From Andalucia godoyi And28 (Eukaryota > Protista > Jakobida), in contig VRVR01000051.1 in the NCBI GenBank assembly GCA_009859145.1, positions 64,549-128,548 on the forward strand: a stretch of DNA of 64,000 nt, read 5' to 3'. The first letter of the stretch is position 1. Each line of letters begins with the position of its first letter. Under the pieces are notes generated by a model that was not told the DNA's origin, ran no database searches, and saw only the letters and a program-made list of their open reading frames with translations. Below are positions 1,586 through 20,894 of the stretch, piece after piece. A program made the position numbers and the translations under genes.

Positions 1586-1846
1586 TTGTACTGGATCGGC
1601 AGATCGTTCAGCTCATTTATCGTTCCAGTGTGGTGACGTTGATGGTCCGACCGAATCGACAACCTTCGACCAGAATGCACGATAAGCGTACATGCACGAT
1701 AACCGTTCTTTCGCTCTTGGGAAAGGATCCGTCCTATCGGTGTGTCCCGACCTATGATCATTTACTTTCTTCTTTGATGTGGCATTAATTATATTATTAG
1801 TGTATTTTAAATTCTCGGTGATTTGAGGTTGAGAGGTATAGAAGCC

Positions 1847-4270
1847 ATGGGCAAGCGAGACATGGCGCGTGAGAATGGGATTCGCGGAGATCGGAATTGG
1901 AAGAAGTCCAAGAAGATGCGCAAGGCGGAGCGTGCGAAGAGTGGCGGCGATGCGGAAGAGCCGCAGCCGTACGTGTCTCGTGTTGGGAATGGGTGGTCGC
2001 TGACGACAGCTGCGAACGAGCGTTTTGAGCGGTACTATCGCGAGCAGAAGTGGATGAGTGAGGAGGAGTTTGGAGTGTTTATGAGTACTCTGCGCACCCC
2101 GCTTCCTGTTTCGTGGAGGTTCCATGCGAATGCTGCCGGGTGTGCGCAGACCGTGCAGCTGATGAAGGAGCATTTTATCCGAAGAATGGGGGATGTGAAG
2201 GTTGACGGCCACGCGATTGCACAGCCTTATGCGCTGCCGTGGTATCCACAGGAAGATTATGCATGGCAATTTGCGATTTCTCGGACACAGCTCCGACAGA
2301 GCTTGCTGCTGAAGGAGTTCCACCAGTTTCTTGCGCATGAAACAAACTCGGGAATGCTCTCGAGGCAAGAACAGGTGTCCATGATCCCTGCACATTTTTT
2401 GACGATTGAACCGTCGCATAAGATTCTGGATGTATGTGCAGCTCCGGGATCCAAGACGGCGCAGCTGATGGAGCTTCTAGTGGAAAAGGCAACGCCGGAG
2501 AACCCGGTTACCGGGTTTGTGGTTGCGAATGACGCAAATGTGCAGAGATGCTACTTGCTGTCACACCAGACCCAGCGGCTTTCCAGGCTGTTTCCGTACC
2601 TGATCATCACGAACGAAGACGCTGCAAACATTCCGACCTTTACACAACTCGATGGATCTGAGCTGCGGTTTGATTCTATTTTGTGCGACGTTGTTTGTTC
2701 TGGAGACGGAACGCTGCGAAAGAGCCCCGACCTCTGGGCAAGATGGTCACCGGCAATGGCAAACGGCATTCACCTGGAGCAGGTTCGAATTGCTCGACGA
2801 GCTTTGCATCTGCTGAAGGTCGGAGGCGAGCTTGTCTACTCCACGTGCTCGATGAATCCAGTCGAAGACGAAGCCGTGCTTGCAGAGCTGCTCAGAGAGT
2901 ACAAGGGCGCCATTGAACTGGTGGATTGTTCCCACATGTTCCCTGCGCTGAAGCGATGGAAGGGCGTTTCCACGTGGGTGAACACGGACAGGGAAGCGAG
3001 ACGTACGTTTACCTCCTTCGAGACTCTTCCAGAGGATGTCAAGGTGTCGCAAAAGAGGTATCCTAGATCCGTCTTCCCGCCATCGGAAGAAGAGAGTTCG
3101 TGGATGCATTTGGACCGATGCATGAGGTTTCTGCCGCACTTCCAGGACACTGGTGGATTCTTTGTTGCAAAGTTGCGAAAGACTGCAGAACTCAACCCTT
3201 CGCGCGCGGAGCGCAAGATGAAGTATCTTGCTCACAGGAAGGTGGAAGAAGAATGTGGGGCTACCGCGGCTGATGCTGAGGTCGCCATGGAAGGCGGTCC
3301 CGATGGGGCTGACGCTGGACTTGAAGAGGAAGGTAGTGCCGGTGGTGCCGGTGTTGCGATTCCCAACGAAGGAGACGTCGATAATTATAACCGCGATGCT
3401 GATGATGATGATGATGATAATGATAATGATAATGACGGTGATGACGTAGTCGTTGAAGGTGTGGAAGGTGCTGGCGAGCCAAAGACCGGAGAACATATGG
3501 GAGAAGCAGATGTCGAAAAGTTGCATTGCCGTCAGCTGTGGTCGCTGATGTTCAGAGGTGTTCCTGATGATCGCTGGGCGGTACTGCAGAAGCGATTTGG
3601 ATTCCCGGATTCGCTGCGTGCGAACCTCTTGTTCCGTGGTAATTTCAAGGAACAAAAGCTTCGTGGAATCTGCTATGTCGCGTCCGCCGTTCGGTCGATT
3701 TTGGAAGCGAACGAGAAAATGAGACGGGACAACCAGAAGCATCGAGCAGGTCAGTGGGATGTTATTGCGGCTGGCCTCTTTTCTCTCGACAATCACAACT
3801 CGATGAAGTTTGAAGGCAACGAGCGATTCACGCATGACGCTGTCCCCATCTTCGCGCCGCAGATACGAAAGGAGTTTATCGTGCGCATTCCTTGGACCGA
3901 TTTTCTGCGCTTCGTCGACGAAGGAACGCTTCGTTTGGATAGCTGTCTCCCGCGATCCAAAGAAGCATTTGATGCACTTCCTCTCGGTGCGTTCATCGGA
4001 GTTCCCGAATCCACTGATGACGTGAATGCGAAGTTCCCTGCCGTCGAGGACTGGATTAAAATGGGTATGTACGTGTCCTTGGCGAAGAACGTCGGGGCTG
4101 TTCATGCGTATCTTTCTAAAGATGTGCGAGATGTGTTCAAGTACCGCATGGCAATGTTCACGGGCATTCCAGTTCCAAATCAAATCTCTGAAGAACGAGA
4201 GAAAATCGAGGCTCTTCTGCGACAAGAACAACAATCCCAAGATCCTGTTGCTGCCGCTCCTGCTCCGTAG
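1847..4270 (+). CDS. NSUN2: tRNA (cytosine-C5)-methyltransferase NSUN2/Trm4, with an acidic insertion
   Basis: Motifs ILDVCAAPGSKTAQL, ILCDVVCSGDGTLRK, LVYSTCSMNPVEDEAV and RFLPHFQDTGGFFVAKL. First ATG at 1847. Confidence 0.92.
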   Translation: MGKRDMARENGIRGDRNWKKSKKMRKAERAKSGGDAEEPQPYVSRVGNGWSLTTAANERFERYYREQKWMSEEEFGVFMSTLRTPLPVSWRFHANAAGCAQTVQLMKEHFIRRMGDVKVDGHAIAQPYALPWYPQEDYAWQFAISRTQLRQSLLLKEFHQFLAHETNSGMLSRQEQVSMIPAHFLTIEPSHKILDVCAAPGSKTAQLMELLVEKATPENPVTGFVVANDANVQRCYLLSHQTQRLSRLFPYLIITNEDAANIPTFTQLDGSELRFDSILCDVVCSGDGTLRKSPDLWARWSPAMANGIHLEQVRIARRALHLLKVGGELVYSTCSMNPVEDEAVLAELLREYKGAIELVDCSHMFPALKRWKGVSTWVNTDREARRTFTSFETLPEDVKVSQKRYPRSVFPPSEEESSWMHLDRCMRFLPHFQDTGGFFVAKLRKTAELNPSRAERKMKYLAHRKVEEECGATAADAEVAMEGGPDGADAGLEEEGSAGGAGVAIPNEGDVDNYNRDADDDDDDNDNDNDGDDVVVEGVEGAGEPKTGEHMGEADVEKLHCRQLWSLMFRGVPDDRWAVLQKRFGFPDSLRANLLFRGNFKEQKLRGICYVASAVRSILEANEKMRRDNQKHRAGQWDVIAAGLFSLDNHNSMKFEGNERFTHDAVPIFAPQIRKEFIVRIPWTDFLRFVDEGTLRLDSCLPRSKEAFDALPLGAFIGVPESTDDVNAKFPAVEDWIKMGMYVSLAKNVGAVHAYLSKDVRDVFKYRMAMFTGIPVPNQISEEREKIEALLRQEQQSQDPVAAAPAP

Positions 4271-5105: not shown

Positions 5106-8100
5106 ATGTCAAACGGCAGACCACCAAATGAGCGCATGTCTGTTCCGGGGCTTCCTCCCTTACCGGCATTTCGGTTTTCAGATCTTAAAAGCACTCCTTC
5201 TGCGCCACCGCCACCATCATCACCCCTGCCATTGTCCGGTACTCTAGAAGCAGCTGCTCCCGGCCGTCCAAAGAACCCCTTGACAGAGGACATTGGTCCA
5301 TTGCTGCCTTTGAGTAGGTCTCCCTTTTCTAGAGATCCAATGCCGCAGCCTCTGGCAATGAAATCGCCGACGGCCAAATCGAGTGCGAGCCCCTTCGCTA
5401 CTTCTGGTGGTTCGTTTGTGGAGGATGGTAGTAGGAATGCTCCTGCGACGAATCCGGTGGCAGGAGCGAAGGGCCTCGAATCGATCGCCGGAAGTTCTCG
5501 TGCTCTTGAGCCGATCCATGTCTATTTCAAGATGAACAGGTTCCACAAAGTAGTTCTCGCGACGAATGCTGGTATTCTGCTGTTCTGCTTGATTTCCTCT
5601 TTCATTGTGCTGTACTATGTTGGAGCCAAGAGAGTCGATGGAGACGTTGTTTTCGAAAACTCGGTCAAGGTCCAAAATGACCTGGCAGTGTCGGGCGTTG
5701 CGTCGTTTTCCGAACTACATGTTAACGGCCCTCTCTTTCTAGATGATGCGTCGTTGGGAGCAAACCAACTCTTCTTGCAGAAAAACCTTACTGTATACGG
5801 GGGATCGCTGTTTTCGGGTCCTGTGGACATTCGCAGTGGAATGAACATTGCTTCTTCAGCAACGTCCACGTTTGAAGGTCCCGTTGCCGTTGAAGGATTG
5901 ATGTCTGCCACGTCTCTTATCGTTCCACATCAGCTAACCGTAGGGGCAAATTTAACAGTAGAGAAGGACGCGTCCGTAGGAATGCTTCATGCTGCGACCC
6001 TCGAGCTGGATGGCAGCTTGGCACTGAACGGATCCATGCACATATCGGCGAATCTGACGGTTGTCGGTGCGACCAACTTCTTTGGCGGCCTCGTTGCTTC
6101 TGGCCCCTCTTTTCTGGTGCTCTCAAACGAGACGCTGTTCCAAGGAAGCGTTAGAATTACGAGCTCAAACTTTTCTGTACGAGGATCCTCTACACTAAAC
6201 GGCTCTTTGGCAGTCAAGAACTCGGTAACGCTGTCAGACTCTTTGCTGATTGGAAATCAATGGGCTACGAGCCCGTCTCTGTCTGTGAATGCCTCGCAGT
6301 TCTTGTTCATTGCACCAAAGGCGACATTCCTGGTGAATGCATCGTCTGTTTTCGACGGCCGCGTTCGGCTGAGCGCCCCAGCTCTCTTTCAGTCCTCGAT
6401 ATCCATTGAGGGATCGCTCAATGTCAGCGGTTCCTCGTTTTTCGCAGATTCGGTTGTTGTGAACGGCTCCGTTTCTGCTTCTGGCTCGCTGGCTGTCAGC
6501 GGCGATGCAACGGTGGGCGGCTCCGTTGTCGTCAAAGGGTTCGCGTCCGTGAACGACGATTTGCGAGTCGGAGGAATGATGAAGTGCGAAGGACCCCTGA
6601 GTGTCGGGCGGAACTTGTCTGTTGCAAACACCGCACAAGTCGCGCAGGATGTGATCATTCTTGGAAATTTGATTGTGCGCCGAAATATGACTGTCGAAGG
6701 ATCCCAAGACGTGTATGACCAAGTTATTCGAAATCTGGGGTTTGGTCGGTTTTCAGGACTGCGTGTGGACGGAAGCTCGATCCTCAACGGCTCTGTCACA
6801 GTCAGTGGATCTTCCCTGTTTTCCGGGAACGTATCTGTTGCGGGTCCGTTTTCATCGACTGGAACAGCGTCATTTTCAGGGCCGGTGACCCTGCGATCCG
6901 GGCTGTTCATATCCTCCGGTTCGCTTTCTCTCCTCAAGAATTCGAAACTGCTCGTGTCTGGAAATATGAGTGTGTATGGAAACAGCCAATTTTCAGGGTC
7001 GCTGACTGTCAATAACACATTTTCTGTGGCCTCCGACGTGTCGGTGGATGGACAATTGACTGTCGGTCGTTCCGTGCTGGTTTCTGGAAGTGCGGTGATC
7101 ACAGGAACGCTTTCCGCAGAATCTGGGTTTTTCGTGAACAATGTCTCTGTTCACGGATACGTGAACGTTTCGAACGGGCTGACGGTGATGAACGACGTCA
7201 TCCTTGCGAATGGCAGTCTGCTAGTAGGTAAGAATTTGTCGGTCCAAGGAAACGCGACGTTTGTAGATACTGTCTTTCTTGATTCCAGACTGACAGTCCG
7301 AGGACCATCAACATTTTCGTCTGCCGTGGCAGTTCTTGGGCCTGTAGTCATTTCCAACAATTCGCTAACCGTCAATGGCGTGCTGTCTGTGAATGGCTCG
7401 GTGAACGTGGAAAGAGACGTCACTCTTCGCGGAGACTTTGTGTTCGTCGGGCACTCTCTTCTTGTCAGCGGGGTTACTGGGCTGAACAGCTCCACATCTG
7501 TGACCGGAAACCTCAGTGTCGCTGGTCTTGGTCGGTTTTCTGGAGGTGTAGAGGTGACTGGTGTTCTCAGTACCGTGCAATTGAATGTATCAGGCTCGTT
7601 GAGCGTTTCTGGGACAGTTGTGATCGGTGGGTCGACAACCATCTCTTCGTCGCTGTTTGTCCAGAATTCGTCCACCGTGGGTGGGCTCCTCACGGTGCTG
7701 GGCAGCTTAAATGTGACAGACCGTGCTGTTTTTGACAGCCAAGTGTTCATCAAAGGAGGACTGTTTGTGCACTCAAACACGACGTTTTATCGGAACGTCT
7801 CTGTGGCGGGGTCCTTGTCGATCTTCGCAGCTGCGTACTTTGGCGATCTAACAGTCGTCACCGGTACCATGATAGTTCCTCGGTTGAATGTCTCTTCCGT
7901 TGCGATCTTTCATGGCGCGTTGACCGTGGGAGGAGATGTGGTTTTGGACGGGCTCCTGCAAGCAGGAAGTGGCTGTGTGGTGTCAAATTCTCTGCAAACC
8001 CTCGGCCCCATGACTGTGAACGGGTCACAAACTGTGACGGGCAGCATTACTGTCGGCAACTCGCTTTTCGCGAATGTAGGAAATTTCTCGGGGAGCCTTT

Positions 8101-10229
8101 GGGTTGGAGGTGATTTAATAGCTGAAGGGGATACTACTCTGCGTCGGGGCCTGAATGTCAGTGGCGATGTTTTCTTCAATGGCAGTCTCGCTGTCCTGGG
8201 CCAAGTGTCCGTGGCTTCCACTGCAGTTTTTAATCAGAATCTGACTGTGTCTGGTGCCGTGGAGATTCGGGGGACCTCTCTTTTTCGTGGAGATGCGTAT
8301 GTTTCCGGCGTTTCCAATCTGGGCGGAAGACTGTTTGCATCACCGAGCGAAGTTAGTTTCAACGTGTCAAGAATCACTCTGAGTTCTTTTGACCAGAATC
8401 GGCAATTCTGGTTTTCATCGGCGCTGTCGACTTCCCTGGTAGTGGACGATCGGAAGTTTTTCGGCCTGCAAGTAGATGGCAACTATAATCCACAACAGAT
8501 TCTGTTCCGGCCTCGACTGGTGCCTGGGGGCATGTTTGTTGATGCCAACGGCTCGGTCGGTATAGGTCCTGGCGTGTCGTCTGCGCAGGGCGCTCTTCAT
8601 GTAGAAAACGACTTCATTCTTGGGCCTTCCCTCTTCGGAAGCCGCTTCAAGATATCGATCCAGTCTTTGCAGTCGACTGCGGACCACTTCTTCATTCAGT
8701 TCGACACGTTGTCCGGGACGTTTACGTCGTCAAACATGCTGAGTTTCCAGCGAGGGACGGGTAATTTTGGAATCTCGCAATCGGTTCCTGCCGCAAAACT
8801 GCATGTGAATGGAGATGTGAGGGTGGAGAAGGATGTGCAGTTTGCAGACTCTGGCCTTCTGTGGCATGTGAACAAGGATGTTCAGGGACTTGCAGTGCTG
8901 CGGCAGGAGGGATATTTCAATGTCTCTGGAGAAAATGGCGATGCGATAATTTTTCGGAAGACGGATCCTTTCAACAGCATTCCCGTTGGCGGAATTGCGT
9001 TCTCCAACTTGCAAAATTCATCCGATGTCATTGCGTTGTCGATCCGAGGAAACGGTTCGATTGGCATCAACACCTTGTATCCCACGCACTACTTGGACGT
9101 TGCTGGAAATGCTCGTTTCCGACGCGAGGTGTTGCTGAATGACTATCTGGAGTTTGACTATCAGTCTGGTAGCCGCTTGCTGTGGAAATCACATCCGTCG
9201 TCGACGAGCGAGTTCCTTGTTCGGACGATAGAGAATCTTGCTGGACTGAATGCGGATGCTGTTTTGTTTGACAAGACAAGCGCATCCAATGCGACTGCGG
9301 TGCCGGGCGCCATAATATTTTCGAGCACCCCGTCCACCGGAGTCACCTCTTATCAGGTGGTCATCCGGACGGATACCAAAAGAGTCGGAATCAACGAGCT
9401 GAATCCGATGGCAGATCTGGACACACCATCGTGTCACGTTCGGAATGTCATGCAACACAGCACGGCGATTGAATATCAGCAAGCGCCCTCTCTGACTTCG
9501 ACTCTGCTGTATGCCCAGGTAAGCCCCACAACAAACCCTCCAGACGGAGACGGCTTTCGAGTTCGCTATCTCAGCCAGGCATTCGGCGTCTCTGCAAGAT
9601 CTCTTGTGTTTGAGAAGACCGATGGAACGAATCTCGACCCCGTTGGTCTGATTGGGTTTGCGATGACCGGCTCGGACGGCGTGGTACATCCCGCGCTTGT
9701 CATCCGTGGCTCTGGAAATGTCGGGATCGGCACGTCCAGTCCATCGTCGTCATTGGAGGTTGTTGGCGACGTAACCGTATCGCAGAACGTAATCATATCT
9801 GGGCAGTACCAGCTAGCGGCCGGTACCGTTTCGTCGACGTCGGGCATCCAATCATCATCGCTGGTCCTCAATGCCGCCGCCCACTCGACAAGCACCGTTG
9901 GCTGGTCGGTGCTGTCGGCCACGTGGGATCCGGTCTTTTTGGTTCTCTCCGTTTCTGCTGGAGTGTATTCGTTCGAAGGAAACGGCAACTTTAACCTTGC
10001 GGGCGCGTCTGCCTCGGGGAGTGCGCTGTCCATTCCATTTACTACGCCGTACGCGCTGAATGCAGCCCCAATATGCCAAGGCGGTGTGCGGAACTACCCT
10101 GGGTTTTTGGACGTCACCGCAGCTTACTCTTCATTAACTCTCAGGATGTACTCCACCGTCGGAAGTCTCGTTGCTTGGTCGTCCCTTCCGTCTCTTGGCA
10201 TCCAGTTGACTTGCGTCGGCGTGTCCTGA
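5106..10229 (+). CDS. Giant type II membrane protein with beta-strand repeats and tail-fibre-like GNVGIGT..P modules (fibre-like protein 1)
   Basis: Pro/Ser-rich N-terminus, one hydrophobic helix (VVLATNAGILLFCLISSFIVLYYVG, about 5550-5625), about 950 aa of V-x-G-x-L-x-V repeats, then G.VGI.T..P...L.V.G modules and a compact C-terminal domain. First ATG at 5106. Confidence 0.85.
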   Translation: MSNGRPPNERMSVPGLPPLPAFRFSDLKSTPSAPPPPSSPLPLSGTLEAAAPGRPKNPLTEDIGPLLPLSRSPFSRDPMPQPLAMKSPTAKSSASPFATSGGSFVEDGSRNAPATNPVAGAKGLESIAGSSRALEPIHVYFKMNRFHKVVLATNAGILLFCLISSFIVLYYVGAKRVDGDVVFENSVKVQNDLAVSGVASFSELHVNGPLFLDDASLGANQLFLQKNLTVYGGSLFSGPVDIRSGMNIASSATSTFEGPVAVEGLMSATSLIVPHQLTVGANLTVEKDASVGMLHAATLELDGSLALNGSMHISANLTVVGATNFFGGLVASGPSFLVLSNETLFQGSVRITSSNFSVRGSSTLNGSLAVKNSVTLSDSLLIGNQWATSPSLSVNASQFLFIAPKATFLVNASSVFDGRVRLSAPALFQSSISIEGSLNVSGSSFFADSVVVNGSVSASGSLAVSGDATVGGSVVVKGFASVNDDLRVGGMMKCEGPLSVGRNLSVANTAQVAQDVIILGNLIVRRNMTVEGSQDVYDQVIRNLGFGRFSGLRVDGSSILNGSVTVSGSSLFSGNVSVAGPFSSTGTASFSGPVTLRSGLFISSGSLSLLKNSKLLVSGNMSVYGNSQFSGSLTVNNTFSVASDVSVDGQLTVGRSVLVSGSAVITGTLSAESGFFVNNVSVHGYVNVSNGLTVMNDVILANGSLLVGKNLSVQGNATFVDTVFLDSRLTVRGPSTFSSAVAVLGPVVISNNSLTVNGVLSVNGSVNVERDVTLRGDFVFVGHSLLVSGVTGLNSSTSVTGNLSVAGLGRFSGGVEVTGVLSTVQLNVSGSLSVSGTVVIGGSTTISSSLFVQNSSTVGGLLTVLGSLNVTDRAVFDSQVFIKGGLFVHSNTTFYRNVSVAGSLSIFAAAYFGDLTVVTGTMIVPRLNVSSVAIFHGALTVGGDVVLDGLLQAGSGCVVSNSLQTLGPMTVNGSQTVTGSITVGNSLFANVGNFSGSLWVGGDLIAEGDTTLRRGLNVSGDVFFNGSLAVLGQVSVASTAVFNQNLTVSGAVEIRGTSLFRGDAYVSGVSNLGGRLFASPSEVSFNVSRITLSSFDQNRQFWFSSALSTSLVVDDRKFFGLQVDGNYNPQQILFRPRLVPGGMFVDANGSVGIGPGVSSAQGALHVENDFILGPSLFGSRFKISIQSLQSTADHFFIQFDTLSGTFTSSNMLSFQRGTGNFGISQSVPAAKLHVNGDVRVEKDVQFADSGLLWHVNKDVQGLAVLRQEGYFNVSGENGDAIIFRKTDPFNSIPVGGIAFSNLQNSSDVIALSIRGNGSIGINTLYPTHYLDVAGNARFRREVLLNDYLEFDYQSGSRLLWKSHPSSTSEFLVRTIENLAGLNADAVLFDKTSASNATAVPGAIIFSSTPSTGVTSYQVVIRTDTKRVGINELNPMADLDTPSCHVRNVMQHSTAIEYQQAPSLTSTLLYAQVSPTTNPPDGDGFRVRYLSQAFGVSARSLVFEKTDGTNLDPVGLIGFAMTGSDGVVHPALVIRGSGNVGIGTSSPSSSLEVVGDVTVSQNVIISGQYQLAAGTVSSTSGIQSSSLVLNAAAHSTSTVGWSVLSATWDPVFLVLSVSAGVYSFEGNGNFNLAGASASGSALSIPFTTPYALNAAPICQGGVRNYPGFLDVTAAYSSLTLRMYSTVGSLVAWSSLPSLGIQLTCVGVS

Positions 10230-10680: not shown

Positions 10681-11147
10681 TCTTTGCTTTTGGCTCGTCT
10701 TTTGTCAAGTGTCTCTGTTGTCGAGTGATTGGCAACCAAATATAAAAACAAAAATCCCGTGCCGTCGTCGTCTCTGCCTTTTCCATGCTGGTCCGCTATT
10801 GCCGGGGTCTCCTGCATGCTTGTCGATGAGTGCTTACGGCACCCCACCGCCCAATCCTCTGGTGCACCACCCGGTGCGAACGGACGAACAGCATCTGCTG
10901 TAGTCCCGAGCAGACGTCGTTCGAGTCGACATGCTTCGACTGTGCTTCGAAATCGTCAGAAGCGCTTGCTCAACAGAAAGGAGCGTCTTTGCTTGTTGTA
11001 TCAGGTTTTTTCGTCTTCCCAGCAGCGATTTTTACGTACTGAAGCAGGTACGTAAGCAACACATCATTTATTTATTCTTGCATACTTTTTTCGCTTTCCT
11101 TTTTTTTTTTTAATTTTTCATTTTGATTGTGTACTGGGAAAAGAAAT

Positions 11148-11792
11148 ATGCTGCAGACAGCGCTTCGTAGAGGGGTGTATCGTCCAACGGCTGTACCAGC
11201 ATTTTCAAGAGCAATGTCGTTTTCGTATCCGGGTCCACGCAAGCTCGGGGATCTTGTGAAGCTTCCGTTGCTTGAGCGGGAGTCGCCTGAAAAGATCCGG
11301 CATATCTGGCGTGAGTACCACAATGACGAAGAGAGAAGAACGGATGGAAAGCGGCCTTCATTTGCGGAGGTTCTTGAGTCGTCGCAGTACTCGCAGCTTC
11401 GTTTACGGTCGAAGCAAAGTCCGATGTTTGTGTTTCCGGTGCTGAAGCCAAAGGGATATATCAACTTGGTGACGCAGTTTCAGGACACGTTTTGCCTGGC
11501 TACCTCGCTTGAAGAGTATCAGAAACGGAGGTCGTTTTCATTCCCGCATGTCACGATTACGTTCTTCGAAGAGCTAATGAAGGAAAAGAACATTGTGCTG
11601 ATGCGTGCCGACATGTTTTCGCCCGATTTGACAAGAGATGAAGGACAGCAAATGTTCCAGAGTTTGCTCCGGTTTTACTTGTCGGACAGGGAATATACAA
11701 GGTTTGTCGAGACGTTCAATTCAAGACCAAGAGAATTTAATTTCCAAGACCTGCTGAAGGAAATCCAGGTAACCCAATTAAATGGAAAATAA
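11148..11792 (+). CDS. ATP11: Mitochondrial F1-ATPase assembly factor ATP11/ATPAF1
   Basis: Arg-rich presequence-like N-terminus; PRKLGDLVKLPLL..ESPEKIRHIWREYH and SPMFVFPV motifs. Confidence 0.85.
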   Translation: MLQTALRRGVYRPTAVPAFSRAMSFSYPGPRKLGDLVKLPLLERESPEKIRHIWREYHNDEERRTDGKRPSFAEVLESSQYSQLRLRSKQSPMFVFPVLKPKGYINLVTQFQDTFCLATSLEEYQKRRSFSFPHVTITFFEELMKEKNIVLMRADMFSPDLTRDEGQQMFQSLLRFYLSDREYTRFVETFNSRPREFNFQDLLKEIQVTQLNGK

Positions 11793-11889: not shown

Positions 11890-14800
11890 CTAGAGAGCCG
11901 CAATACAGTGAACGTTGATGTTGCCAGAATAGGCAGACCACGATGCAGCTGTGAACTGATAAGTGCGCAAGTAGAGATCCAAAGACGAAGTTCCGGGGTG
12001 CGGCTGTGCGAAGTAACCATGATCTAGAGATGTGGAGCAAACAGGAGGCCGCGCAAACGTTGTGCTGAAGGGCACGGTAAGACGAGCACCACTGCAAGAG
12101 TACGAGCCAGAGAAGCCCGCATAACCACCAAAACTGTAAGTGGAATCTGCGAGAGACCCGGATCCGCAGGCAGCAAACGGAGTTCCGATGATCAGAAATC
12201 GGACCGATGAAGCCCCGTCTGCGGCGATCGCAGATTCGACCATAGTCTGCGACGCGATGTTTACGCTCACCTTATCCAGCAGGTCTATCGACGAAGAGTC
12301 GAGGTATGTGTTGCCACCGACGACATGCAGGTTCTTGGACGGGCTTGCAGTGTTGACACCAACGCGGCCTGCTTGGTCATTGACCGACAGACTGACAACA
12401 TCAAAGTTTCGAAATTCGAAGCCGTTGCTGCCAGAGACCGTTTGGAACACAACGTTGGATGAGGCGTCTTTGGATGCGGAGAACCGTGTCGGGCACCTCA
12501 GAAATGTGAATGCACTGGATCCGGCGGAAAAATACGCATACGTCACAAGTTGTATGGAGGTTTGCGTTCGAAAGGTACCATCCACCAACACCATGTTGGA
12601 GGGGACGGCAGAAGAACCAAAGGTAACAGCGCCATTGGAGCGAACAACAATCGCTGAACTTCCAAATTCTATCCAGGAACTTGCGCCCGTGGTCTTCATG
12701 GTGTACGTATCCGACGCACTTTCATAGCTGAACAGGAAGTCCAACACGCTGGATGCGTGATGCTGCAGAATCACCGAGGGGGAATGGGAGATGAGCGAGC
12801 CGCGATGAATCGTTATGTTCTGCGTCCCTCGAACGTTGCCCACAACATGCAGAATATAGCCTGCATCCGGAGATGTGGTGCCCATCCCAATCCGACCATC
12901 TTGTCGGATGACCATGTGGCTCGTCGTGGAGTCATCCACAGCATACGTAGTCGCAAATACAAAACTCCCAGACGTCTGCTCATAGACTGTGATCGGAGCG
13001 ACCAAGGATCCAAAAGAACTCGCAAGTCTCGTTCGAAAAGACATGTCTTGCAGCAACTCGGATGTTCTGAACACTTTCAACATCTCCGACGTTCCTTCAA
13101 GATACGAAAACGCCTTCTCTCCAATAATTAACTGGTTTCGCACTCGCACGTCGCCGTTCACAACAAGAGGGTATCCCAGAGTCAATCCTGCGGTGTTGAT
13201 TCCAACATTTGCTGAAGGACCATCCAAGGAAAGGAGCTCCACAGTTCCGATCGTATTGGTAGCAATGAAAACAATGCGACCATCTGGAGCGCCTCCCGCA
13301 GCGTCTGTCTTTCGGATGACGCATGATCTATGCGTCGGGTCAGCAGATTCGATCCGAAACCCATCTTGGGAAGGAAATCCGTCGATCAGCGTCCCGACAC
13401 GGGAGTTCTTCAAAAATACTAAAGATCCATTCGTGACGACGTGTTCCCTAAGGACTGCTCCAGTTCCATAGACCTCAAACATATAGTCCGTGCTCGAAGT
13501 CGACAGGCCGTTGATCACAACTTGCTTTCCTTTGTGTATGGAAAGAACACTCCGAACAGGACTGCCGCTCGGAAACGGAACGGTCGAAAAGACCGCGACA
13601 TCGGCAGTATCTCCCAGGCGATAGGACGTCGTGTTCCGGTCTCCCCAAGGACTGTTCTTGTCAACCCAAATAGAGATCCCAGCAGCATCCACGAACTTGC
13701 CATACTCTCGATTATCAATTCGCAGGCCGCCCTCCACAGAAAGCCGGTTCCGTACCATCACATCGCCGTCCACATCCAGAGTATGCTCTGCAACGGCAGA
13801 GCCGTTTGGAGAAATCAGCAACCGGTAGTTTCCAGGAAACGTCGAAACCGCCAACAAAGACCCATAGGTCAAATCTAGCCGCGCTCCAGTACCAGTGGAA
13901 TCGGAGAGTGCTACGTTGCCAATTACAATCGGCTTTGCAACATCAAGATCCCCTCGTGGGACGTACGTGTCGGGAAACCCTATCGAAACTTGGGAGGAAT
14001 CCACATGCAGAGTCAATCCCTTGTTCTCAATGTTTGGATCAAAGTGGACGGAACGGTGGCCAGTGGTTAGCCGTATCTTGAGAAAATCGTCGAACAGGAT
14101 TGGTGTCATATTGTCGGAGCGAAATTCAAAGAATGGTGCATCAATGTACATGACACGCTGGTGAAGACGTAAAGCGGAAGACAAACTTGCAAACCCATCC
14201 TGCGAGTTTCCAGTCATTTCAAAGTTTGCAGACTCGACATGAAACGAATTACTAATTGAAACGTTATTTTGGAAAACGAGAGACGAAGATCCGACGGACA
14301 GGTTGCCCGCTACAAAGACGGAGCCATCCACGACCAGCGCACCCGCTACGGAAACTTGAGCGGTCGTGTGCAACGTTCCGTTCACGTGGACTTTCCCGGC
14401 CACGCGCAACGATGCTTCGAACGATCCATCACGTGCAGAAATGTCTCCGTAAACAGTAATTCCTGTCTTTGAAAATATACTGTTGTTGATTGCAAAAACA
14501 TCAGCAACAGATATTGCGTTTTCGGCAACGAAGGATCCAGCACTGAGAAAAGCGCCAAGGACTCGAAGAGACGACGCATAGACACCTCCGAAAACCTCGA
14601 CACCTTCCGACACATTCACGAACTGCGCCGTCAGGCTCCCCAGCACATTCACATTCTTGCCAACTTCCAGTCTGCCTCCGATGCGGGTTGATGAATTGAC
14701 AAGTAACTGATTGCGAACGAGCAGCGAGTCGCTGCACGTCATCGTAGAAACGGATGATGCAGATCCGTTCAAGAAGATGCCACCTAGGGACACAAGCCTT

Positions 14801-17800
14801 GAAACATTCAATGCTCCTCCTACAGTTACAGCTCCCAATGACGAAATATTCTTCGCAACAACACCTTTCCCTACGACGAGAGCTTGGTCCAAGGTGATCG
14901 AACTACTGGAATACATACTGGACGTGACGTTCCACGAGCCGCCGATGGCCAGCTCCCCCAACACCGTTGCATTGGTCCCGGCGTAAACAGCACCTTGGAT
15001 GAGAGAAGAGTTGTGCACCAGAATTTGAGGCGCAGAAGCAACGCCCAATGGATCGACCAAGATGTCAAAAGGTGTTGTCAAACCATAATTGGACAGGTAC
15101 AATGTGCCACGAACATCAAGGCATCCAGATACCCTAGTGGAGAATGATCGGAGAAGGCTTGTATTCGCCACAAGGTTACCAAGCAACAGAAACGGACTGG
15201 AAGAAGCGTTTAAAACGGAAGCCGTCAACGACAGGCTCTTCATTACTTGGAGAAGTCCCAGGACTTGTACTTGTGCTGCGCCCTGGACGTACATGGCACC
15301 ATTGACGAGCATATTGTTCTTCACTGTGAGACCGCCGTCAAGAAGGGACGTGCCAAACGGGAAATATGCATGCTGCGATACTGTCAGGCACGAATCGACA
15401 ACGAGAGAGGACGTGGACGTTACTGAAGTCACGTTCACCGGTGCATCAAAGACTGCATCCGACATTGCTGTCACCACAGAATCGACAGACATATTCCCAT
15501 TGACAGTGAGCATTCCAGATGCATTGATGGAAGAAGCGAACGCATCGCGCGATATATTAAGGAGACCAGTCGAGAATACGCCGTCAATAGATGCACTTCC
15601 GGTTACTTCCAGGCCTTGAAGCACAAAGGCTGATTTCAGAAACGCACCCCGATTGACAACGACACTCGCGCACTCTGCATGCAATACATTCGCGACATTG
15701 AGAACACTGTTTCCGGAATAAGTGGAAAACTGCAATGATTCGAGACTCAATAACTCCGACACGAAAATATCGCCCTTTACAAACACAGTGCCGTTGGCAT
15801 TCAGCGACTCTGTGATTTCCAGGTTCTGCGATACTTCAACGGCCTCTGCTACATCCACGGATGCTTGGAAAACCGCCCAATTCGACATCATTCGTCGACC
15901 AAAACTAAATGGGCCTTGAACATCTATGCTGCCTGACGAATGCAACGACTCGTTCACTTGGAGAACTCCAATAGACACTTCATTTCCCAAAATCGACAGC
16001 GATAACGGCGTGGCTTCCAGCACCATAGAGCCAACAGTTGCAGAAACACCATCAAGAATCCTAAGTCCGCTACCCGCAATAAAATCCTCATCTACAAGAA
16101 TCGTAGAGGACACGTGAATCGCTCCAGAGATCGTTGTCAGGTTGCCTACAACAACGTCTCCCAAAACATGCAGAGATCCATTGAACATAAACGAACGAGC
16201 ATTGATGGCGGTCGTTCGCAAAGTGTCTTGCACTCGCGCGGATCCAATGTAATGGGCACCAGATGAGCTTGTTAGCATATTCAAACCGCCGACCAAGTAC
16301 AAGTTCCCAAACGTCGCTAACCCTGATACAGTAATGGATCCACCAACACTTGCTGCGCTCGTGACCCTCGCGGATCCCGATAGTCGACAATTCCTGCAAG
16401 CCACACCTTCATTAACAATTAGTGATACATTGGATCCAAGAATCGAATCCGAGAACAACCATCCGTGAATAGAGAGATTTCCGGAAGGAAAGTCAAGGAA
16501 ACGCGATATACTAATGATCTCATTGTTGTCGGCAATGAGGCGCTTGGTTCGTAACGAAGAAAATGACGCTGTCCCGTTGATATCCAATCCATGCGTTAGC
16601 TTGCCCGTCGCGGCGATAAGGCCTACGAATGATAGAGGGTCCTGCGATCCCACCGTCTGCATATGCATCGACCCACGAAGGGAGACGGCTAAGCCAGCCG
16701 AAGACCGAACATCGCCTCGAATCTCAGACACCACATCAGAATACGACAACACAGACTCGACAGAGACACTTTCGCCAACAGAAAGCGTATCACCAACAAG
16801 CAATGTGTGGTTCACTTGGATGTTCCCAGCTTGGAATGCAGACGCATTCAGGACGGCAAGTCCTTCCACGTTTACGGACCCTTGAACTTGGATTGCTAAA
16901 TCAGTAAACTCTGACCGCTCAGCTCTGATGACTGCATCGCCGCCTACCGTCCACTCTCCAGTGACGGCAACGTGCGATTGATCCACTGTCGTTTGAGAGG
17001 AAACATTGGACACCGTTAACAGACTGGATATCTGCAATCCCTCGCTCGATTGGATGATAGCCATGCCCTCCACATCTACTTGTCCCAATACGGCAACCTT
17101 TTGTTCGGAAGCTGCAGAAGAGACCCCGGGATGTTGGGGATCGGCGTGCACTGATGTCGTCAAGGAAGGCCCGAGTCGGACAATCCCTGATGCCGCCGTA
17201 GCAGCTCCCACAACCGTAACATCTCCTTTGAACTCGCTCACTCCGCGAGAGACGAGCGTGTGGGACTCGGCGCCATCCGACGCTTCCAACGAGTCCATTT
17301 CAATTGTACCGTCAACGTCAATGTCGAACATCCATCTTCCCTCGCTCAGCACAACGATCGAAAACACAGATAGTCCAATGAGATACAATGTCATCAAGAC
17401 CAGCAACGCGTGGGCCCATGGAATCACTCGCTTCACAGACGACGATGATGCTGACGACGTTGAAGTCGAGGTCGAAGACGCGGAATCGGGACGAGGGCGA
17501 AATGGAGGAAATGGCGGAAATGGCGGAAATGGCGGAATAGCAGAATGCAAGATCTCGTGACGGCCATGATCGATAATGTTTTCAGACCCGTGTGGAAGCA
17601 GCGGATTTCTTATCGTAGACCCAAAAGGCGAAGTAGCAGATGCAGCCACGGAGCGAATATCGCGATCCACGTACTTTGGTGGCGCAGGTGGCGGGATAAA
17701 CGGCAGTGAGTAAAGATCGCCGGCTCGGTCAACATCGAGGGGGTCCGGTATTCTCCGCAAAGGCGGAAGCAGAGGAGGAGGCAGCCTTACTCGGTCCTCA

Positions 17801-17880
17801 CTCCGCTGGTTCGAACTGAACGGCGACTGGCCCGAATACCGAACCCCCGGCCGGACAGCCGAAGACGTCGAAAAATGCAT
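11890..17880 (-). CDS. Giant type II membrane fibre-like protein 2 (divergent paralog of 5106-10229)
   Basis: Pro-rich N-terminus, TM helix (HALLVLMTLYLIGLSVFSIVVL), long beta-repeat stalk, modules DGRIGMGTTSP, SANVGINT and AGRVGVNTASPSKNLHVVG, and C-terminal TVPFSTTFARPPVC domain. Confidence 0.85.
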   Translation of the reverse strand: MHFSTSSAVRPGVRYSGQSPFSSNQRSEDRVRLPPPLLPPLRRIPDPLDVDRAGDLYSLPFIPPPAPPKYVDRDIRSVAASATSPFGSTIRNPLLPHGSENIIDHGRHEILHSAIPPFPPFPPFPPFRPRPDSASSTSTSTSSASSSSVKRVIPWAHALLVLMTLYLIGLSVFSIVVLSEGRWMFDIDVDGTIEMDSLEASDGAESHTLVSRGVSEFKGDVTVVGAATAASGIVRLGPSLTTSVHADPQHPGVSSAASEQKVAVLGQVDVEGMAIIQSSEGLQISSLLTVSNVSSQTTVDQSHVAVTGEWTVGGDAVIRAERSEFTDLAIQVQGSVNVEGLAVLNASAFQAGNIQVNHTLLVGDTLSVGESVSVESVLSYSDVVSEIRGDVRSSAGLAVSLRGSMHMQTVGSQDPLSFVGLIAATGKLTHGLDINGTASFSSLRTKRLIADNNEIISISRFLDFPSGNLSIHGWLFSDSILGSNVSLIVNEGVACRNCRLSGSARVTSAASVGGSITVSGLATFGNLYLVGGLNMLTSSSGAHYIGSARVQDTLRTTAINARSFMFNGSLHVLGDVVVGNLTTISGAIHVSSTILVDEDFIAGSGLRILDGVSATVGSMVLEATPLSLSILGNEVSIGVLQVNESLHSSGSIDVQGPFSFGRRMMSNWAVFQASVDVAEAVEVSQNLEITESLNANGTVFVKGDIFVSELLSLESLQFSTYSGNSVLNVANVLHAECASVVVNRGAFLKSAFVLQGLEVTGSASIDGVFSTGLLNISRDAFASSINASGMLTVNGNMSVDSVVTAMSDAVFDAPVNVTSVTSTSSLVVDSCLTVSQHAYFPFGTSLLDGGLTVKNNMLVNGAMYVQGAAQVQVLGLLQVMKSLSLTASVLNASSSPFLLLGNLVANTSLLRSFSTRVSGCLDVRGTLYLSNYGLTTPFDILVDPLGVASAPQILVHNSSLIQGAVYAGTNATVLGELAIGGSWNVTSSMYSSSSITLDQALVVGKGVVAKNISSLGAVTVGGALNVSRLVSLGGIFLNGSASSVSTMTCSDSLLVRNQLLVNSSTRIGGRLEVGKNVNVLGSLTAQFVNVSEGVEVFGGVYASSLRVLGAFLSAGSFVAENAISVADVFAINNSIFSKTGITVYGDISARDGSFEASLRVAGKVHVNGTLHTTAQVSVAGALVVDGSVFVAGNLSVGSSSLVFQNNVSISNSFHVESANFEMTGNSQDGFASLSSALRLHQRVMYIDAPFFEFRSDNMTPILFDDFLKIRLTTGHRSVHFDPNIENKGLTLHVDSSQVSIGFPDTYVPRGDLDVAKPIVIGNVALSDSTGTGARLDLTYGSLLAVSTFPGNYRLLISPNGSAVAEHTLDVDGDVMVRNRLSVEGGLRIDNREYGKFVDAAGISIWVDKNSPWGDRNTTSYRLGDTADVAVFSTVPFPSGSPVRSVLSIHKGKQVVINGLSTSSTDYMFEVYGTGAVLREHVVTNGSLVFLKNSRVGTLIDGFPSQDGFRIESADPTHRSCVIRKTDAAGGAPDGRIVFIATNTIGTVELLSLDGPSANVGINTAGLTLGYPLVVNGDVRVRNQLIIGEKAFSYLEGTSEMLKVFRTSELLQDMSFRTRLASSFGSLVAPITVYEQTSGSFVFATTYAVDDSTTSHMVIRQDGRIGMGTTSPDAGYILHVVGNVRGTQNITIHRGSLISHSPSVILQHHASSVLDFLFSYESASDTYTMKTTGASSWIEFGSSAIVVRSNGAVTFGSSAVPSNMVLVDGTFRTQTSIQLVTYAYFSAGSSAFTFLRCPTRFSASKDASSNVVFQTVSGSNGFEFRNFDVVSLSVNDQAGRVGVNTASPSKNLHVVGGNTYLDSSSIDLLDKVSVNIASQTMVESAIAADGASSVRFLIIGTPFAACGSGSLADSTYSFGGYAGFSGSYSCSGARLTVPFSTTFARPPVCSTSLDHGYFAQPHPGTSSLDLYLRTYQFTAASWSAYSGNINVHCIAAL

Positions 17881-18791: not shown

Positions 18792-20862
18792 CTAATTGTT
18801 TTGCAGTTGCCCAGTCTTCTTCAGAAGAACCGCGGAGAGATCCATGGTTGACACCGCAGATCCCATCGAGCGCATGTTCTTTGCCCTGCGAAACCCGGCA
18901 CCAGACAGAAGATCGCCCATCATGTTATCCATTACTCCAAGATCCGACTTCGCGGGAGAAACGACACTCGGAGAGACGACGGAAGGTGACACCACGGCGG
19001 GAGACGGCTTCGGTCCATCCGAGTCCGCCGCAGCATGGACACCGGCATCCCCCGTCTTTCTGTCCTGATCCCCATCCTCTGTCTTTGCAGATCCTTTCGC
19101 CACTGTCACGGACATCAGAGACACACTCTTCTCTTTTTCTTTTTCCTTTTCCTTTTCTTTTTCCTTTTCCTTTTCCTTTTCCTTTTCCTTTTCCTTTTCC
19201 TTTTCTTTTTCCAGCCTTGGCTTTTCCTTCTCATACTTGACGACACTGCGATCCCAGAGGCTGATGAACTCGGAAAACGAAGCGAAAAACTGCTCTGGAA
19301 TCAACGATTTGGGATCCTCAGCAAAAAAGTTCGCAACATCTGCAATCCTGGAGGTCATCAACGCATTCATTTCCTTCACTTCTTCAATTTCTGTTCTCGC
19401 ACGAACCTCAAAGTCACGCATGACAGACTTAAAGGAATCATCTTCACCATCGTAAGCACTCTGCTCAAGTTCTGTTTGCAACATTCGCAGTCCTTTGTCG
19501 AGCTCGGCGATCTCCGTCGCAATATTGGAAACCACAATACGCTTTGCCTCTGGAACTGCTTCCAAAGAGGAGGCCAGTTTTAGAGCACCGGGGCGCGACT
19601 TTGCAGACTGAACAACCATATAGTCTAGGAGCGACAGTTTTCCATCTGCCGATTTGGTATCCGGAAGTTTTGCAAGAGACTCGATCTTAAAACCGTAAGC
19701 ATTGGCTCTGGCAGAGCCCCCATTCAAATAGTTTCCAACTGCCAATGCGATAGTCAGGAAATCGACCAATGGCTGAGAATCAAGGAGGGAAGAGCAGGCC
19801 TTGGACACTGCTAGGATCTGCGGTTTGATGTCGTCGAGCGCTGAATCCAAACGACGCTTAAAGCTCCAGCATTTCAGCCGTTGTTCCAATCTTGGGATTT
19901 CTCCTACGGCACGCATAAACACGTCTGCTTTGCCCAAGTTCGGAATATCTTCCGATGACACTCCAAAAACCAGCTCGCGCTCCTCGGGTGTTGGTACAGC
20001 TGGGATCAAGGATGTCACGTCGGCGGCGGACAATGCATTCTCATCCATTTTCAAAATCGCTGCACGAATGCCTTCAACAGACAGGTTCCTAAATTTCGAC
20101 TGCAACAAGATCGATACGTTCTGAGATCGCTTGCCATCTAAAACACTGATAACCTGTGGTTGCTTTGGCCCAGCTGATGCAGCTCCGGCTGCAGAAGCAG
20201 CTGCTTTCTTAACCGCAAACAACTGCATGGCAAGATCAAAATCGAGAGAGACCTCTGAAAGCGCGGCAACAACCTTCTTCTCAGTCCAGATTGTCTTTTG
20301 TATTTTCGTGTTTGGAACTTTCGACCAAAATACTCCCTTCACCTCTGAAGTCGGCTTATGCTGTGGCAAAGTGGGAAGGACTGGTCCAAATGCAGGTGCC
20401 ATCATTCCAGGTGGTGGTGGAGGCATCCCCGGCATCCCAGGAGGTGGAGGAGGCATCCCCGGCATCCCAGGAGGTGGAGGAGGCATCCCCGGCATCCCAG
20501 GAGGTGGTGGTGGTGGTGGTGGCATCCCCGGCATCCCAGGTGGCGGTGGTGGTGGTGGTGGCATCCCCGGCATCCCAGGAGGTGGTGGCGGTGGTGGTGG
20601 CATCCCCGGCATCCCAGGAGGTGGTGGTGGTGGTGGTGGCATCCCCGGCATCCCAGGTGGCGGTGGTGGTGGTGGTGGCATTCCAGGCATCCCAGGTGGC
20701 GGTGGCGGTGGCGGTGGCGGAGGCATCCCCGGCATCCCAGGAGGTGGTGGTGGTGGTGGTGGTGGAGGCATCCCCGGCATCCCAGGAGGCGGTGGTGGTG
20801 GTGGTGGCATCCCCGGCATCCCAGGTGGCGGTGGTGGTGGTGGTGGCATTCCAGGCATCCCA

Positions 20863-20894
<32 letters not shown>

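What the first reader, a model, noticed from the sequence alone, without database searches (positions are those of the whole stretch)
5106..10229. Membrane-anchored phage/giant-virus tail-fibre-like giant protein in a eukaryote
Seen: cytoplasmic Pro-rich head, single TM helix, about 950 aa of short beta-strand repeats, five G.(V/I)GI..P...L.V.G-type modules (e.g. GSGNVGIGTSSPSSSLEVVGDV) and a small terminal domain (SIPFTTPYALNAAPIC...LTCVG). Established: GNVGIGT..P modules are typical of trimeric beta-rich fibre proteins of phages, giant viruses and some bacteria, including adhesive fibres of predatory bacteria. Inference: a long trimeric surface fibre with a distal receptor-binding tip, possibly a prey-capture adhesin, hair/scale or extrusome component acquired by HGT. 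I know of no characterised eukaryotic family like this.
Basis: partly seen in the sequence, partly recalled or inferred. Interest (0 to 1): 0.78.

Follow-up and report, generated by a model that had tools for sequence, protein, structure and literature searches.

The report
Phage-fibre-like membrane protein family, jakobid
A bacteria-eating flagellate (Andalucia godoyi) encodes at least three large membrane-anchored proteins whose outer part is built from the same modules as phage tail fibres and the prey-binding fibres of predatory bacteria, which makes them candidates for a protist prey-recognition or adhesion receptor.

Summary
Window 5106-10229 (+) is one intron-less gene of Andalucia godoyi. 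It encodes 1707 aa in five parts:
- a Pro-rich N-terminal tail;
- one signal-anchor TM helix;
- about 900 aa with a strict 6-residue period;
- five V/I/F-G-I…P…L-V loops;
- a C-terminal ~110-aa beta-sandwich with two conserved Cys.

A profile of the C-terminal region hits crystal structures of Bdellovibrio MAT fibres (Bd2133, E 7.7e-18). Foldseek ranks the same fibres first, then phage fibres. The last module is 62% identical to a cyanobacterial one.

The stalk matches Pfam Bactofilin and left-handed beta-helix (LβH) hexapeptide proteins. It is also enriched 2.6-fold in NxS/T sequons. That enrichment is seen only in the Andalucia copies, which argues for an extracellular, glycosylated stalk rather than a cytosolic bactofilin.

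The gene is native by codon use and by its eukaryotic neighbours. It belongs to a family:
- a 1996-aa paralogue lies 1.7 kb downstream (11890-17880, -);
- ANDGO_01795 is a third copy;
- fragments occur on an environmental eukaryotic contig.

The tip has no relatives outside this set. Trimer state, surface location and ligand are inferred, not shown. I rate it a new variant of a known kind.

The parts
5106..10229 (+). Whole gene, 1707 codons plus stop; no intron
   Evidence: ORF. The exact product is in EukProt. GC, GC3 and codon use match the neighbouring genes.
5106..5549 (+). Cytosolic N-terminal tail, aa 1-148; 18% Pro, net charge +6, no signal peptide
   Evidence: It contains LPPLP, PPPP and KSTPSAP motifs, but these are not conserved between the paralogues.
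5550..5627 (+). Single TM helix (signal anchor), aa 149-174
   Evidence: Kyte-Doolittle 2.24, the only such segment. Flank charges are +2 on the N side and 0 on the C side.
5661..8360 (+). Hexapeptide beta-solenoid stalk, aa 186-1085. All 38 NxS/T sequons counted in aa 186-1100 lie at or before aa 1086.
   Evidence: Period 6.0. Pfam Bactofilin hit, 54.2 bits against a cut-off of 27.9. The stalk profile hits LβH proteins in the PDB, best LpxD at E 5.4e-8. PHROG tail-fibre and structural families also match. Sequon excess z=7.4.
8544..9773 (+). Fibre-module region with five capping-loop motifs (aa 1149-1166, 1217-1238, 1315-1336, 1423-1442, 1535-1556). Three full ~80-aa modules lie at aa 1259-1336, 1363-1445 and 1476-1556.
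   Evidence: PDB profile hits: 8OND Bd2133 at E 7.7e-18, then 8OJN, 8OML, 8ON4, 8OL4 and MYRF 7DC3. 47% identity over 117 aa to Okeania. 62% identity over 82 columns to Pleurocapsa.
9900..10226 (+). C-terminal tip domain, aa 1599-1707; eight-strand beta-sandwich with conserved C1657 and C1703
   Evidence: AF2 pLDDT 85-96. Invariant residues. No PDB or Pfam relatives. Found only in the jakobid-type set.
11890..17880 (-). Paralogue, 1996 aa, with the same architecture: Pro-rich tail, TM at aa 157-180, degenerate hexapeptide stalk with 28 sequons, three loop motifs, and a tip with the same Cys pair. It is convergent with the first gene, and ATP11 (11127-11792, +) lies between them.
   Evidence: tblastn gives 24.6% identity over 1427 aa (E 2e-16) plus a separate tip match. 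Anatomy. Sequon excess z=5.0.

Best explanation
The gene encodes a type II (N-in, C-out) single-pass membrane glycoprotein that projects a long beta-rich fibre from the cell surface of the bacterivorous flagellate Andalucia godoyi.

**Parts, from the membrane outwards**
1. A hexapeptide beta-solenoid stalk of about 900 aa, densely N-glycosylated.
2. About 450 aa of modules homologous to the intertwined trimeric beta-helix segments of phage tail fibres and Bdellovibrio MAT adhesins. These carry the same V-G-x-G…P…L 'capping loop'.
3. An independently folding, disulfide-containing beta-sandwich tip that is specific to this lineage. Such a tip is the usual ligand-binding end of fibres of this kind.

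**Likely working**
- Three chains assemble into one fibre roughly 50-110 nm long.
- The tip binds a surface component, most plausibly of prey bacteria.
- The Pro-rich cytosolic tail links the fibre to cortical or endocytic proteins.
- Divergent paralogues with different stalks and tips would widen the range of ligands.

**Shown:** domain anatomy, homology of the modules, a confident tip fold, native eukaryotic context, and the existence of a family.

**Inferred:** topology and glycosylation (from sequence statistics), trimer state (from homologues), and ligand and cellular role (from analogy and the organism's way of life).
For: - **Host and context.** The window is A. godoyi contig VRVR01000051.1. 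The genome is intron-poor. The neighbours are eukaryotic genes: an NSUN methyltransferase, ATP11, a formin and a RhoGEF. Codon use is the same as theirs.
- **Topology.** There is no signal peptide and only one TM helix, and the flank charges favour N-in. The stalk holds 38 NxS/T sequons against 14.4±3.2 expected (z 7.4). The two paralogues also show an excess (z 5.0 and 3.8). The reversed motif is not enriched, and bacterial, NCLDV-like and Balamuthia homologues show no comparable one-sided excess. There are no sequons in the cytosolic tails. Two Cys are invariant in the tip.
- **Fibre homology.** The profile hits crystal structures of MAT fibres at E 7.7e-18 to 2e-4 and MYRF at 0.017. The ten best Foldseek PDB matches are all MAT fibres, followed by endosialidase NF, the LKA1 tailspike and T4 gp34. 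Sixty viral matches have E<1e-3, mostly cyanophage fibres and S74 proteins. PHROG tail-fibre families also match.
- **What the homologues are.** In the solved MAT fibres these modules are intertwined trimers, and the non-S74 tips fold independently (PMC10769870). This fits the AF2 monomer model here, where the modules score pLDDT 50-80 and the tip 85-96.
- **Stalk.** It has period 6, a Pfam Bactofilin hit and LβH profile hits.
- **Family.**
Against: - No experiment or expression data were available.
- Trimerisation was not modelled, because no multimer prediction was on hand.
- It is unresolved whether the stalk is a single-chain solenoid or part of an intertwined helix. The lag profile was inconclusive, and the only solved relatives by sequence are enzymes with LβH folds.
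- The Foldseek TM-scores are low (0.15-0.2), as expected when a monomer model is compared with an intertwined chain. The structural match therefore rests on ranking and E-value rather than on superposition.
- The tip has no detectable relative with a known ligand.
- The cytosolic motifs are not conserved between paralogues.
- The two paralogues have no Pfam hit at all.
Confidence: 0.6

Rival explanations
1. The same surface fibre, but as a structural or protective coat (glycocalyx, cyst wall or flagellar surface layer), or as a means of attachment to substrate or other cells, with no specific recognition of prey.
For: The stalk is heavily sequon-rich and repetitive, as coat proteins often are. 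The tip has no known ligand-binding relatives. Balamuthia has a secreted giant protein with the solenoid repeats alone, so such stalks can exist without a fibre tip.
Against: All five relatives keep a well-folded tip with invariant residues, which points to a specific interaction. The closest solved relatives are adhesins with exchangeable binding tips.
Confidence: 0.25
2. An intracellular, membrane-tethered bactofilin-like cytoskeletal polymer, as the Pfam name would suggest.
For: The Pfam Bactofilin hit scores 54 bits, above the curated cut-off.
Against: - The match covers about 100 of 900 repeat residues, and the paralogues have no such hit.
- The stalk profile finds LβH enzymes in the PDB, not bactofilins.
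- The repeat region lies on the sequon-enriched side of the TM helix.
- It is followed by fibre modules and a Cys-paired tip.
- Bacterial relatives with the same repeats carry S74 chaperones and are annotated as tail-fibre proteins.
Confidence: 0.04
3. Not a working host gene: bacterial or viral contamination, or a decaying insertion of viral origin.
For: The best relatives of both regions are bacterial or lie on giant-virus-like contigs.
Against: - The gene lies inside a 235-kb contig between eukaryotic genes.
- GC3 and codon use are the same as in the neighbours.
- The 5.1-kb frame is intact.
- Three diverged paralogues share eukaryote-type additions: a signal anchor, a Pro-rich tail and a sequon excess.
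- No viral hallmark gene was found among the ten ORFs of 250 aa or more within about 30 kb (1823-38616).
Confidence: 0.03

Closest known systems
Bdellovibrio bacteriovorus MAT (mosaic adhesive trimer) fibres, non-S74 type (Bd2133, Bd1334, Bd2439; PDB 8OND, 8OML/8ON4, 8OL4/8ONF)
   Same: Both have repeated beta-helix modules closed by the V-G-x-x…P…L capping loop (E down to 7.7e-18). Both end in an independently folding beta-sandwich tip instead of an S74 chaperone; one MAT tip also has a single disulfide. Both belong to organisms that feed on bacteria.
   Different: MATs have a signal peptide and a conserved ~130-aa N-terminal domain for attachment to the predator surface. This protein instead has a eukaryotic signal-anchor TM helix, a Pro-rich cytosolic tail and a 900-aa sequon-rich hexapeptide stalk. 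Its tip is unrelated by sequence.
Cyanobacterial 'tail fiber domain-containing proteins' (Moorena, Okeania, Pleurocapsa) and cyanophage tail fibres
   Same: They share the ~80-100-aa module GDGFR…EKTDG…PDGGI…ALVIRG-GNVGIGT, at 47-62% identity. Some also carry short bactofilin-like hexapeptide segments upstream. They are the best Foldseek viral matches.
   Different: They are shorter, have one to a few modules, often end in Peptidase_S74, and have no TM anchor or sequon excess.
Giant-virus-like (NCLDV-type contig) proteins with long bactofilin-type repeats plus Peptidase_S74 (P0002), or with collagen plus two modules (P0012)
   Same: They have the same two building blocks in the same order: a long hexapeptide repeat region, then a GNVGIGT module. 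They are the best whole-protein match (E 3e-32) and the best word-search match for the C-terminal region.
   Different: They carry an S74 chaperone or collagen, have no TM anchor and no sequon excess, and lack the jakobid tip.
Bactofilins (PF04519) and left-handed beta-helix hexapeptide proteins (LpxA/LpxD, gamma-carbonic anhydrase)
   Same: All are 6-residue-period, three-sided beta-solenoids. LβH proteins usually pack as parallel trimers (my knowledge).
   Different: Those are ~100-200-aa cytosolic domains, either polymer-forming or catalytic. Here the solenoid is a 900-aa extracytosolic stalk. Its handedness and oligomeric state were not determined.
MYRF (myelin regulatory factor), the known eukaryotic membrane protein with a phage-derived trimerising fibre segment
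   Same: It is a eukaryotic single-pass membrane protein containing the phage capping-loop segment (PDB 7DC3, E 0.017; the motif link is noted in PMC10769870).
   Different: MYRF uses the S74 chaperone for self-cleavage of a transcription factor on the cytosolic side. The jakobid protein has no S74 domain, and its fibre modules are on the extracytosolic side.
Balamuthia mandrillaris QOT17_005424 (hypothetical protein, 2555 aa)
   Same: It is a eukaryotic giant secreted protein with the same kind of bactofilin-type repeats (24% identity over 53% of the query; Pfam hit).
   Different: It has an N-terminal signal-like sequence rather than a signal anchor. Its gene is spliced. It has no fibre modules, no jakobid tip, and fewer sequons than expected.

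Membership tests
MAT / phage S74-type tail-fibre beta-helix superfamily | Beta-helix modules bearing the capping-loop motif (published consensus V-G-G/N-π-x-x-P-x-x-x-L) | tested here: met
   Five motifs were found. The profile hits 8OND, 8OJN, 8OML, 8ON4 and 8OL4 at E 7.7e-18 to 2e-4. The spacing between V-G and P is one residue longer than the printed consensus, as it is in the bacterial GNVGIGT proteins.
MAT / phage S74-type tail-fibre beta-helix superfamily | Intertwined homotrimer along the fibre | not testable with these tools
   Only monomer AF2 was available. In the monomer model the modules score pLDDT 50-80, which is compatible with a trimer but does not prove one.
MAT / phage S74-type tail-fibre beta-helix superfamily | C-terminal S74 intramolecular chaperone, or an alternative independently folding tip (NS74 type) | tested here: met
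   There is no Peptidase_S74 hit. A confident stand-alone beta-sandwich tip is predicted. This corresponds to the NS74 type.
Bdellovibrio MAT family in the narrow sense | Signal peptide followed by the conserved ~130-aa N-terminal beta-rich domain | tested here: not met
   The N-terminus is a Pro-rich tail plus a signal-anchor TM helix. The whole-protein search found no relative matching this part.
Bactofilin (PF04519) | Pfam domain match above the gathering score | tested here: met
   54.2 bits against 27.9, at aa 434-533. The two paralogues do not match.
Bactofilin (PF04519) | A small cytosolic protein with one ~100-aa beta-helical domain that polymerises end to end | tested here: not met
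   The protein has 1707 aa. The repeats span 900 aa on the sequon-enriched side of a TM helix and are followed by fibre modules.
Left-handed beta-helix hexapeptide transferases | Hexapeptide periodicity and profile similarity | tested here: met
   Period 6.0. LpxD E 5.4e-8, LpxA E 3e-5.
Left-handed beta-helix hexapeptide transferases | Family-level match to an acyl- or acetyltransferase or carbonic anhydrase model | tested here: not met
   There is no Pfam Hexapep hit. All NCBIfam hits fall far below their cut-offs, for example YdcK at 31 bits against 350.
Peptidase_S74 (PF13884) proteins | S74 chaperone/protease domain | tested here: not met
   Absent from this protein and from both paralogues. 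Present in many bacterial and viral relatives.

The most novel reading that the evidence does not exclude
A free-living bacterivorous eukaryote took up the receptor-binding fibre of phages and predatory bacteria. It fused the fibre to a eukaryotic signal anchor, a glycosylated stalk and a cytosolic adaptor tail. It now uses a small, diversifying family of these fibres as prey-recognition (phagocytic) receptors, with a tip domain invented in the jakobid lineage.
Probability: 0.25. Interest if true: 0.85.

Novelty: new variant of a known kind. Interest (0 to 1): 0.62.

Why it matters
How heterotrophic flagellates recognise and hold bacterial prey is largely unknown at the molecular level. This family offers named candidate genes in a small, intron-poor genome. 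Its nearest solved relatives are the prey-binding fibres of a bacterial predator. It would also be a second, independent case, after MYRF, of phage fibre modules built into a eukaryotic membrane protein, and here they would sit on the outside of the cell. It further shows that Pfam 'Bactofilin' hits in eukaryotes and giant viruses can mark extracellular fibre stalks rather than cytoskeleton.

Tried and rejected
- **Tip homologue search.** The third word-index search, using the tip alignment A1, returned nothing, not even the query. That search was wasted.
- **Single-sequence AF2.** The model of aa 1469-1707 was unusable, with pLDDT 33.
- **Metagenome scan.** I did not try a single-protein scan, because the shared words are too short for it to find anything.
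- **Single-chain versus intertwined stalk.** I tested this by looking for an 18-residue superperiod. P0001 shows only a weak one and the paralogues show none, so the result is inconclusive.
- **Apparent tip match to P0198.** I judged this spurious. The alignment is gappy and is carried by the preceding module.
- **Cytosolic linear motifs.** EVH1-, SH3- and WW-like motifs are present but are not conserved among the paralogues, so I make no claim from them.
- **Module tree.** It does not resolve the donor or the number of acquisitions. Jakobid modules are closer to the conserved prokaryotic form (0.38) than to each other (0.31).
- **RNA genes.** Rfam and tRNA scans of the window found nothing.
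- **Literature.** I found no paper describing these proteins. The MAT paper does not mention eukaryotes.
Full report
**1. What is there**

The window is a compact, intron-poor eukaryotic sequence. A neighbouring gene product (780 aa, fatty-acid oxidation enzyme) is encoded on NCBI contig VRVR01000051.1 of assembly GCA_009859145.1. Accession VRVR00000000 is the Andalucia godoyi genome (PMC7050145). That paper describes a ~20-Mb genome in which most genes lack introns.

The genes around the finding are ordinary eukaryotic genes:
- an RsmB/NSUN-type methyltransferase;
- ATP11;
- a Diaphanous-type formin;
- a RhoGEF;
- a HEAT-repeat protein.

The finding itself is one open frame with its first ATG at 5106 and its stop at 10227-10229, giving 1707 aa. 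This exact protein is in EukProt. Its GC (0.527), GC3 (0.557) and codon preferences (r = 0.72 to the other genes) are like those of its neighbours. It is therefore a resident gene, not a contaminant.

**2. Anatomy**

- **Cytosolic tail.** Residues 1-148 are 18% proline and carry no signal peptide.
- **TM helix.** Residues 149-174 are the only strongly hydrophobic segment.
- **Stalk.** Residues 186-1085 have a strict six-residue period. Hydrophobic autocorrelation peaks at every multiple of 6 up to 36, and the Fourier peak at 5.96 is 29 times the mean.
- **Stalk matches.** Pfam sees the stalk as Bactofilin (54 bits, aa 434-533). PHROGs sees phage tail-fibre and structural families. A profile built from this region and its relatives finds only left-handed beta-helix (LβH) hexapeptide proteins among solved structures (LpxD E 5.4e-8).
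- **Loop motifs.** Five V/I/F-G-I…P…L-V motifs follow, at aa 1149, 1217, 1315, 1423 and 1535. The last three each close a full module of about 80 aa.
- **Tip.** The last 109 residues are predicted, from a 16-sequence alignment, as an eight-strand beta domain with pLDDT 85-96. The modules in front of it reach only 50-80.

**3. Which side of the membrane**

The stalk holds 38 N-x-S/T sequons, against 14.4 ± 3.2 in shuffles (z = 7.4). The reversed pattern S/T-x-N is not enriched (17). The cytosolic tail has no sequons.

The same is true of the two Andalucia paralogues (z = 5.0 and 3.8). Homologous repeat regions from cyanobacteria, giant-virus-like contigs and Balamuthia show no such one-sided excess. 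The excess is therefore not a by-product of the repeat.

Three further points agree with this: the missing signal peptide, the charge distribution around the helix, and two invariant cysteines in the tip. Together they argue for a type II membrane protein whose 1530-aa C-terminal part is extracytosolic and N-glycosylated. This is an inference from sequence, not an observation.

**4. Relatives**

Whole-protein search found only distant relatives of the stalk (24-26% identity):
- a 2424-aa protein with Peptidase_S74 on a contig with giant-virus-like gene content (ELO, PIF1, NUDIX);
- a secreted 2555-aa hypothetical protein of Balamuthia mandrillaris.

The exhaustive HMMER search with aa 1101-1707 gave 5081 hits, 440 of them below 1e-10. 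The named ones are cyanobacterial 'tail fiber domain-containing' or hypothetical proteins (Moorena, Okeania, Pleurocapsa, Microcystis), a Bacteroidota protein and an archaeal MAG protein. Many of them end in Peptidase_S74.

The shared unit is a well-defined module (GDGFR…EKTDG…PDGGI…ALVIRG-GNVGIGT). It is 47% identical over 117 aa to Okeania and 62% identical over 82 columns to Pleurocapsa. It is absent from Pfam.

A profile of the region hits crystal structures of Bdellovibrio MAT fibres:
- 8OND Bd2133, E 7.7e-18;
- 8OJN/8ONB/8ONC, E 2.5e-8;
- 8OML and 8ON4;
- 8OL4/8ONF;
- more weakly, MYRF.

Foldseek with the AF2 model ranks the same MAT fibres 1-10. Endosialidase NF, the LKA1 gp49 tailspike and T4 gp34 follow. 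In the viral library it ranks cyanophage tail fibres and S74 proteins first.

In the MAT paper these modules are intertwined trimeric beta-helices whose edges are closed by the loop motif. Non-S74 tips fold on their own. One MAT binds prey O-antigen glycans (PMC10769870).

**5. A family, and a lineage-specific tip**

The 1996-aa ORF on the opposite strand at 11890-17880 is a paralogue. It shows 24.6% identity over 1427 aa and a separate match of the tips. It has the same layout:
- a Pro-rich tail (PPFPPFPPFPPF);
- a TM helix at aa 157-180;
- a degenerate hexapeptide stalk;
- three loop motifs;
- a tip with the same Cys pair.

ATP11 lies between the two convergent genes.

ANDGO_01795 (1635 aa) is a third member, 35% identical over the last 560 aa. 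Two metagenomic fragments carry the same tip. One of them lies at the end of a contig whose other genes are eukaryotic (L51_S25_CI-B8, ATG16, Q_salvage).

Outside these five sequences the tip has no relative in 1.84 billion representative proteins, in the PDB or in Pfam.

**6. How it most likely works**

Three chains are anchored by their signal-anchor helices and assemble into a fibre. The stalk is probably three parallel single-chain solenoids. Both sequence families that it matches are single-chain, and LβH proteins usually form parallel trimers (my knowledge). That would make it about 24 nm long (50 turns of 4.8 Å). An intertwined stalk, about three times longer, is not excluded.

The module region would form the intertwined beta-helix seen in MAT fibres, and the three tips would form the distal end. 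Scaling from the published fibres (370 aa per 15 nm for Bd2133; ~780 aa per 55 nm for Bd3182) puts the ectodomain between about 50 and 110 nm.

A. godoyi is grown on live bacteria as food. Its closest solved relatives are prey-binding adhesins. Binding of bacterial surface components is therefore the most economical function, but it is only an analogy. A general coat or attachment role is the main rival.

**7. Origin**

The modules and the repeat type are abundant in bacteria, phages and giant-virus-like contigs. Apart from this family, the stalk-only Balamuthia protein and a weak profile match to MYRF (E 0.017), I found none in eukaryotes. Transfer into the jakobid lineage is therefore likely.

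The module tree does not identify a donor. Jakobid modules resemble the conserved prokaryotic form (0.38) more than each other (0.31), while prokaryotic modules are 0.61 identical among themselves.

A single acquisition followed by duplication is favoured by four things the paralogues share: the tip, the anchor and the sequon pattern, together with host-like codon use (measured only for the two paralogues in this window). The same features argue that the event is not recent.

**8. Limits**

- Only the best 150 of the 5081 hits could be inspected, and few carry names, so weaker eukaryotic relatives may exist.
- There are no expression, localisation or oligomer data.
- The Foldseek TM-scores are low because a monomer model of an intertwined chain cannot be superposed.

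Noticed in passing
window 11890-17880 (-): A second, 1996-aa member of the same family, convergent with the finding's gene. The exact ORF translation is not in the protein collection, so the public gene model may differ.
   Followed up: yes
window 11127-11792 (+): The ATP11 (mitochondrial F1-ATPase assembly) gene sits in the 1.7-kb gap between the two convergent fibre genes. Its stop is 98 bp from the stop of the downstream paralogue.
   Followed up: partly
window 54600-57070: A stretch of about 2.5 kb has no ORF of 90 aa or more on either strand. It has the lowest GC of the window (0.444 in 54001-56000). No Rfam or tRNA hit was found there. It could hold an intron-rich gene, a non-coding RNA or a long regulatory region.
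   Followed up: no
window 20403-20986 (- strand gene 18792-23033): Tandem repeats of 30-168 bp (GGTGGTGGC ATCCCCGGC…) lie inside the formin gene. On the coding strand they encode the Pro/Gly-rich FH1 region.
   Followed up: partly
window 6389-7141 and 7151-7780 (-), and other antisense ORFs inside 5106-10229: Long antisense ORFs (up to 250 aa) overlap the fibre gene. They are most likely by-products of the biased, repetitive codon content of the stalk and have no support of their own.
   Followed up: no
window 35449-38616 (-), 42375-46064 (-), 47776-50079 (-), 62300-63565 (+): Four sizeable ORFs (1055, 1229, 767 and 421 aa) have no Pfam family at E<=1e-3.
   Followed up: no
locus L005 10001-17275 (protein P0002) and L006 3771-6518 (P0012): Contigs with giant-virus-like gene content encode a 2424-aa protein (hexapeptide repeats, GNVGIGT, S74) and a protein with collagen plus two modules. 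The P0002 repeats show a 30-residue superperiod (five hexapeptides), unlike the jakobid stalk.
   Followed up: partly
locus L004 6001-13875 (Balamuthia mandrillaris QOT17_005424): An amoebozoan has a spliced gene for a secreted 2555-aa protein made of acidic bactofilin-type repeats. It has fewer sequons than expected (4 against 15.8). It is a second, different eukaryotic use of this repeat.
   Followed up: partly
window 1823-4270 (+): The NSUN-type methyltransferase carries an Asp/Asn-rich low-complexity insert (DADDDDDDNDNDNDGDD). Its ORF starts at TTG in the mechanical list, so the true start is probably a downstream ATG.
   Followed up: no
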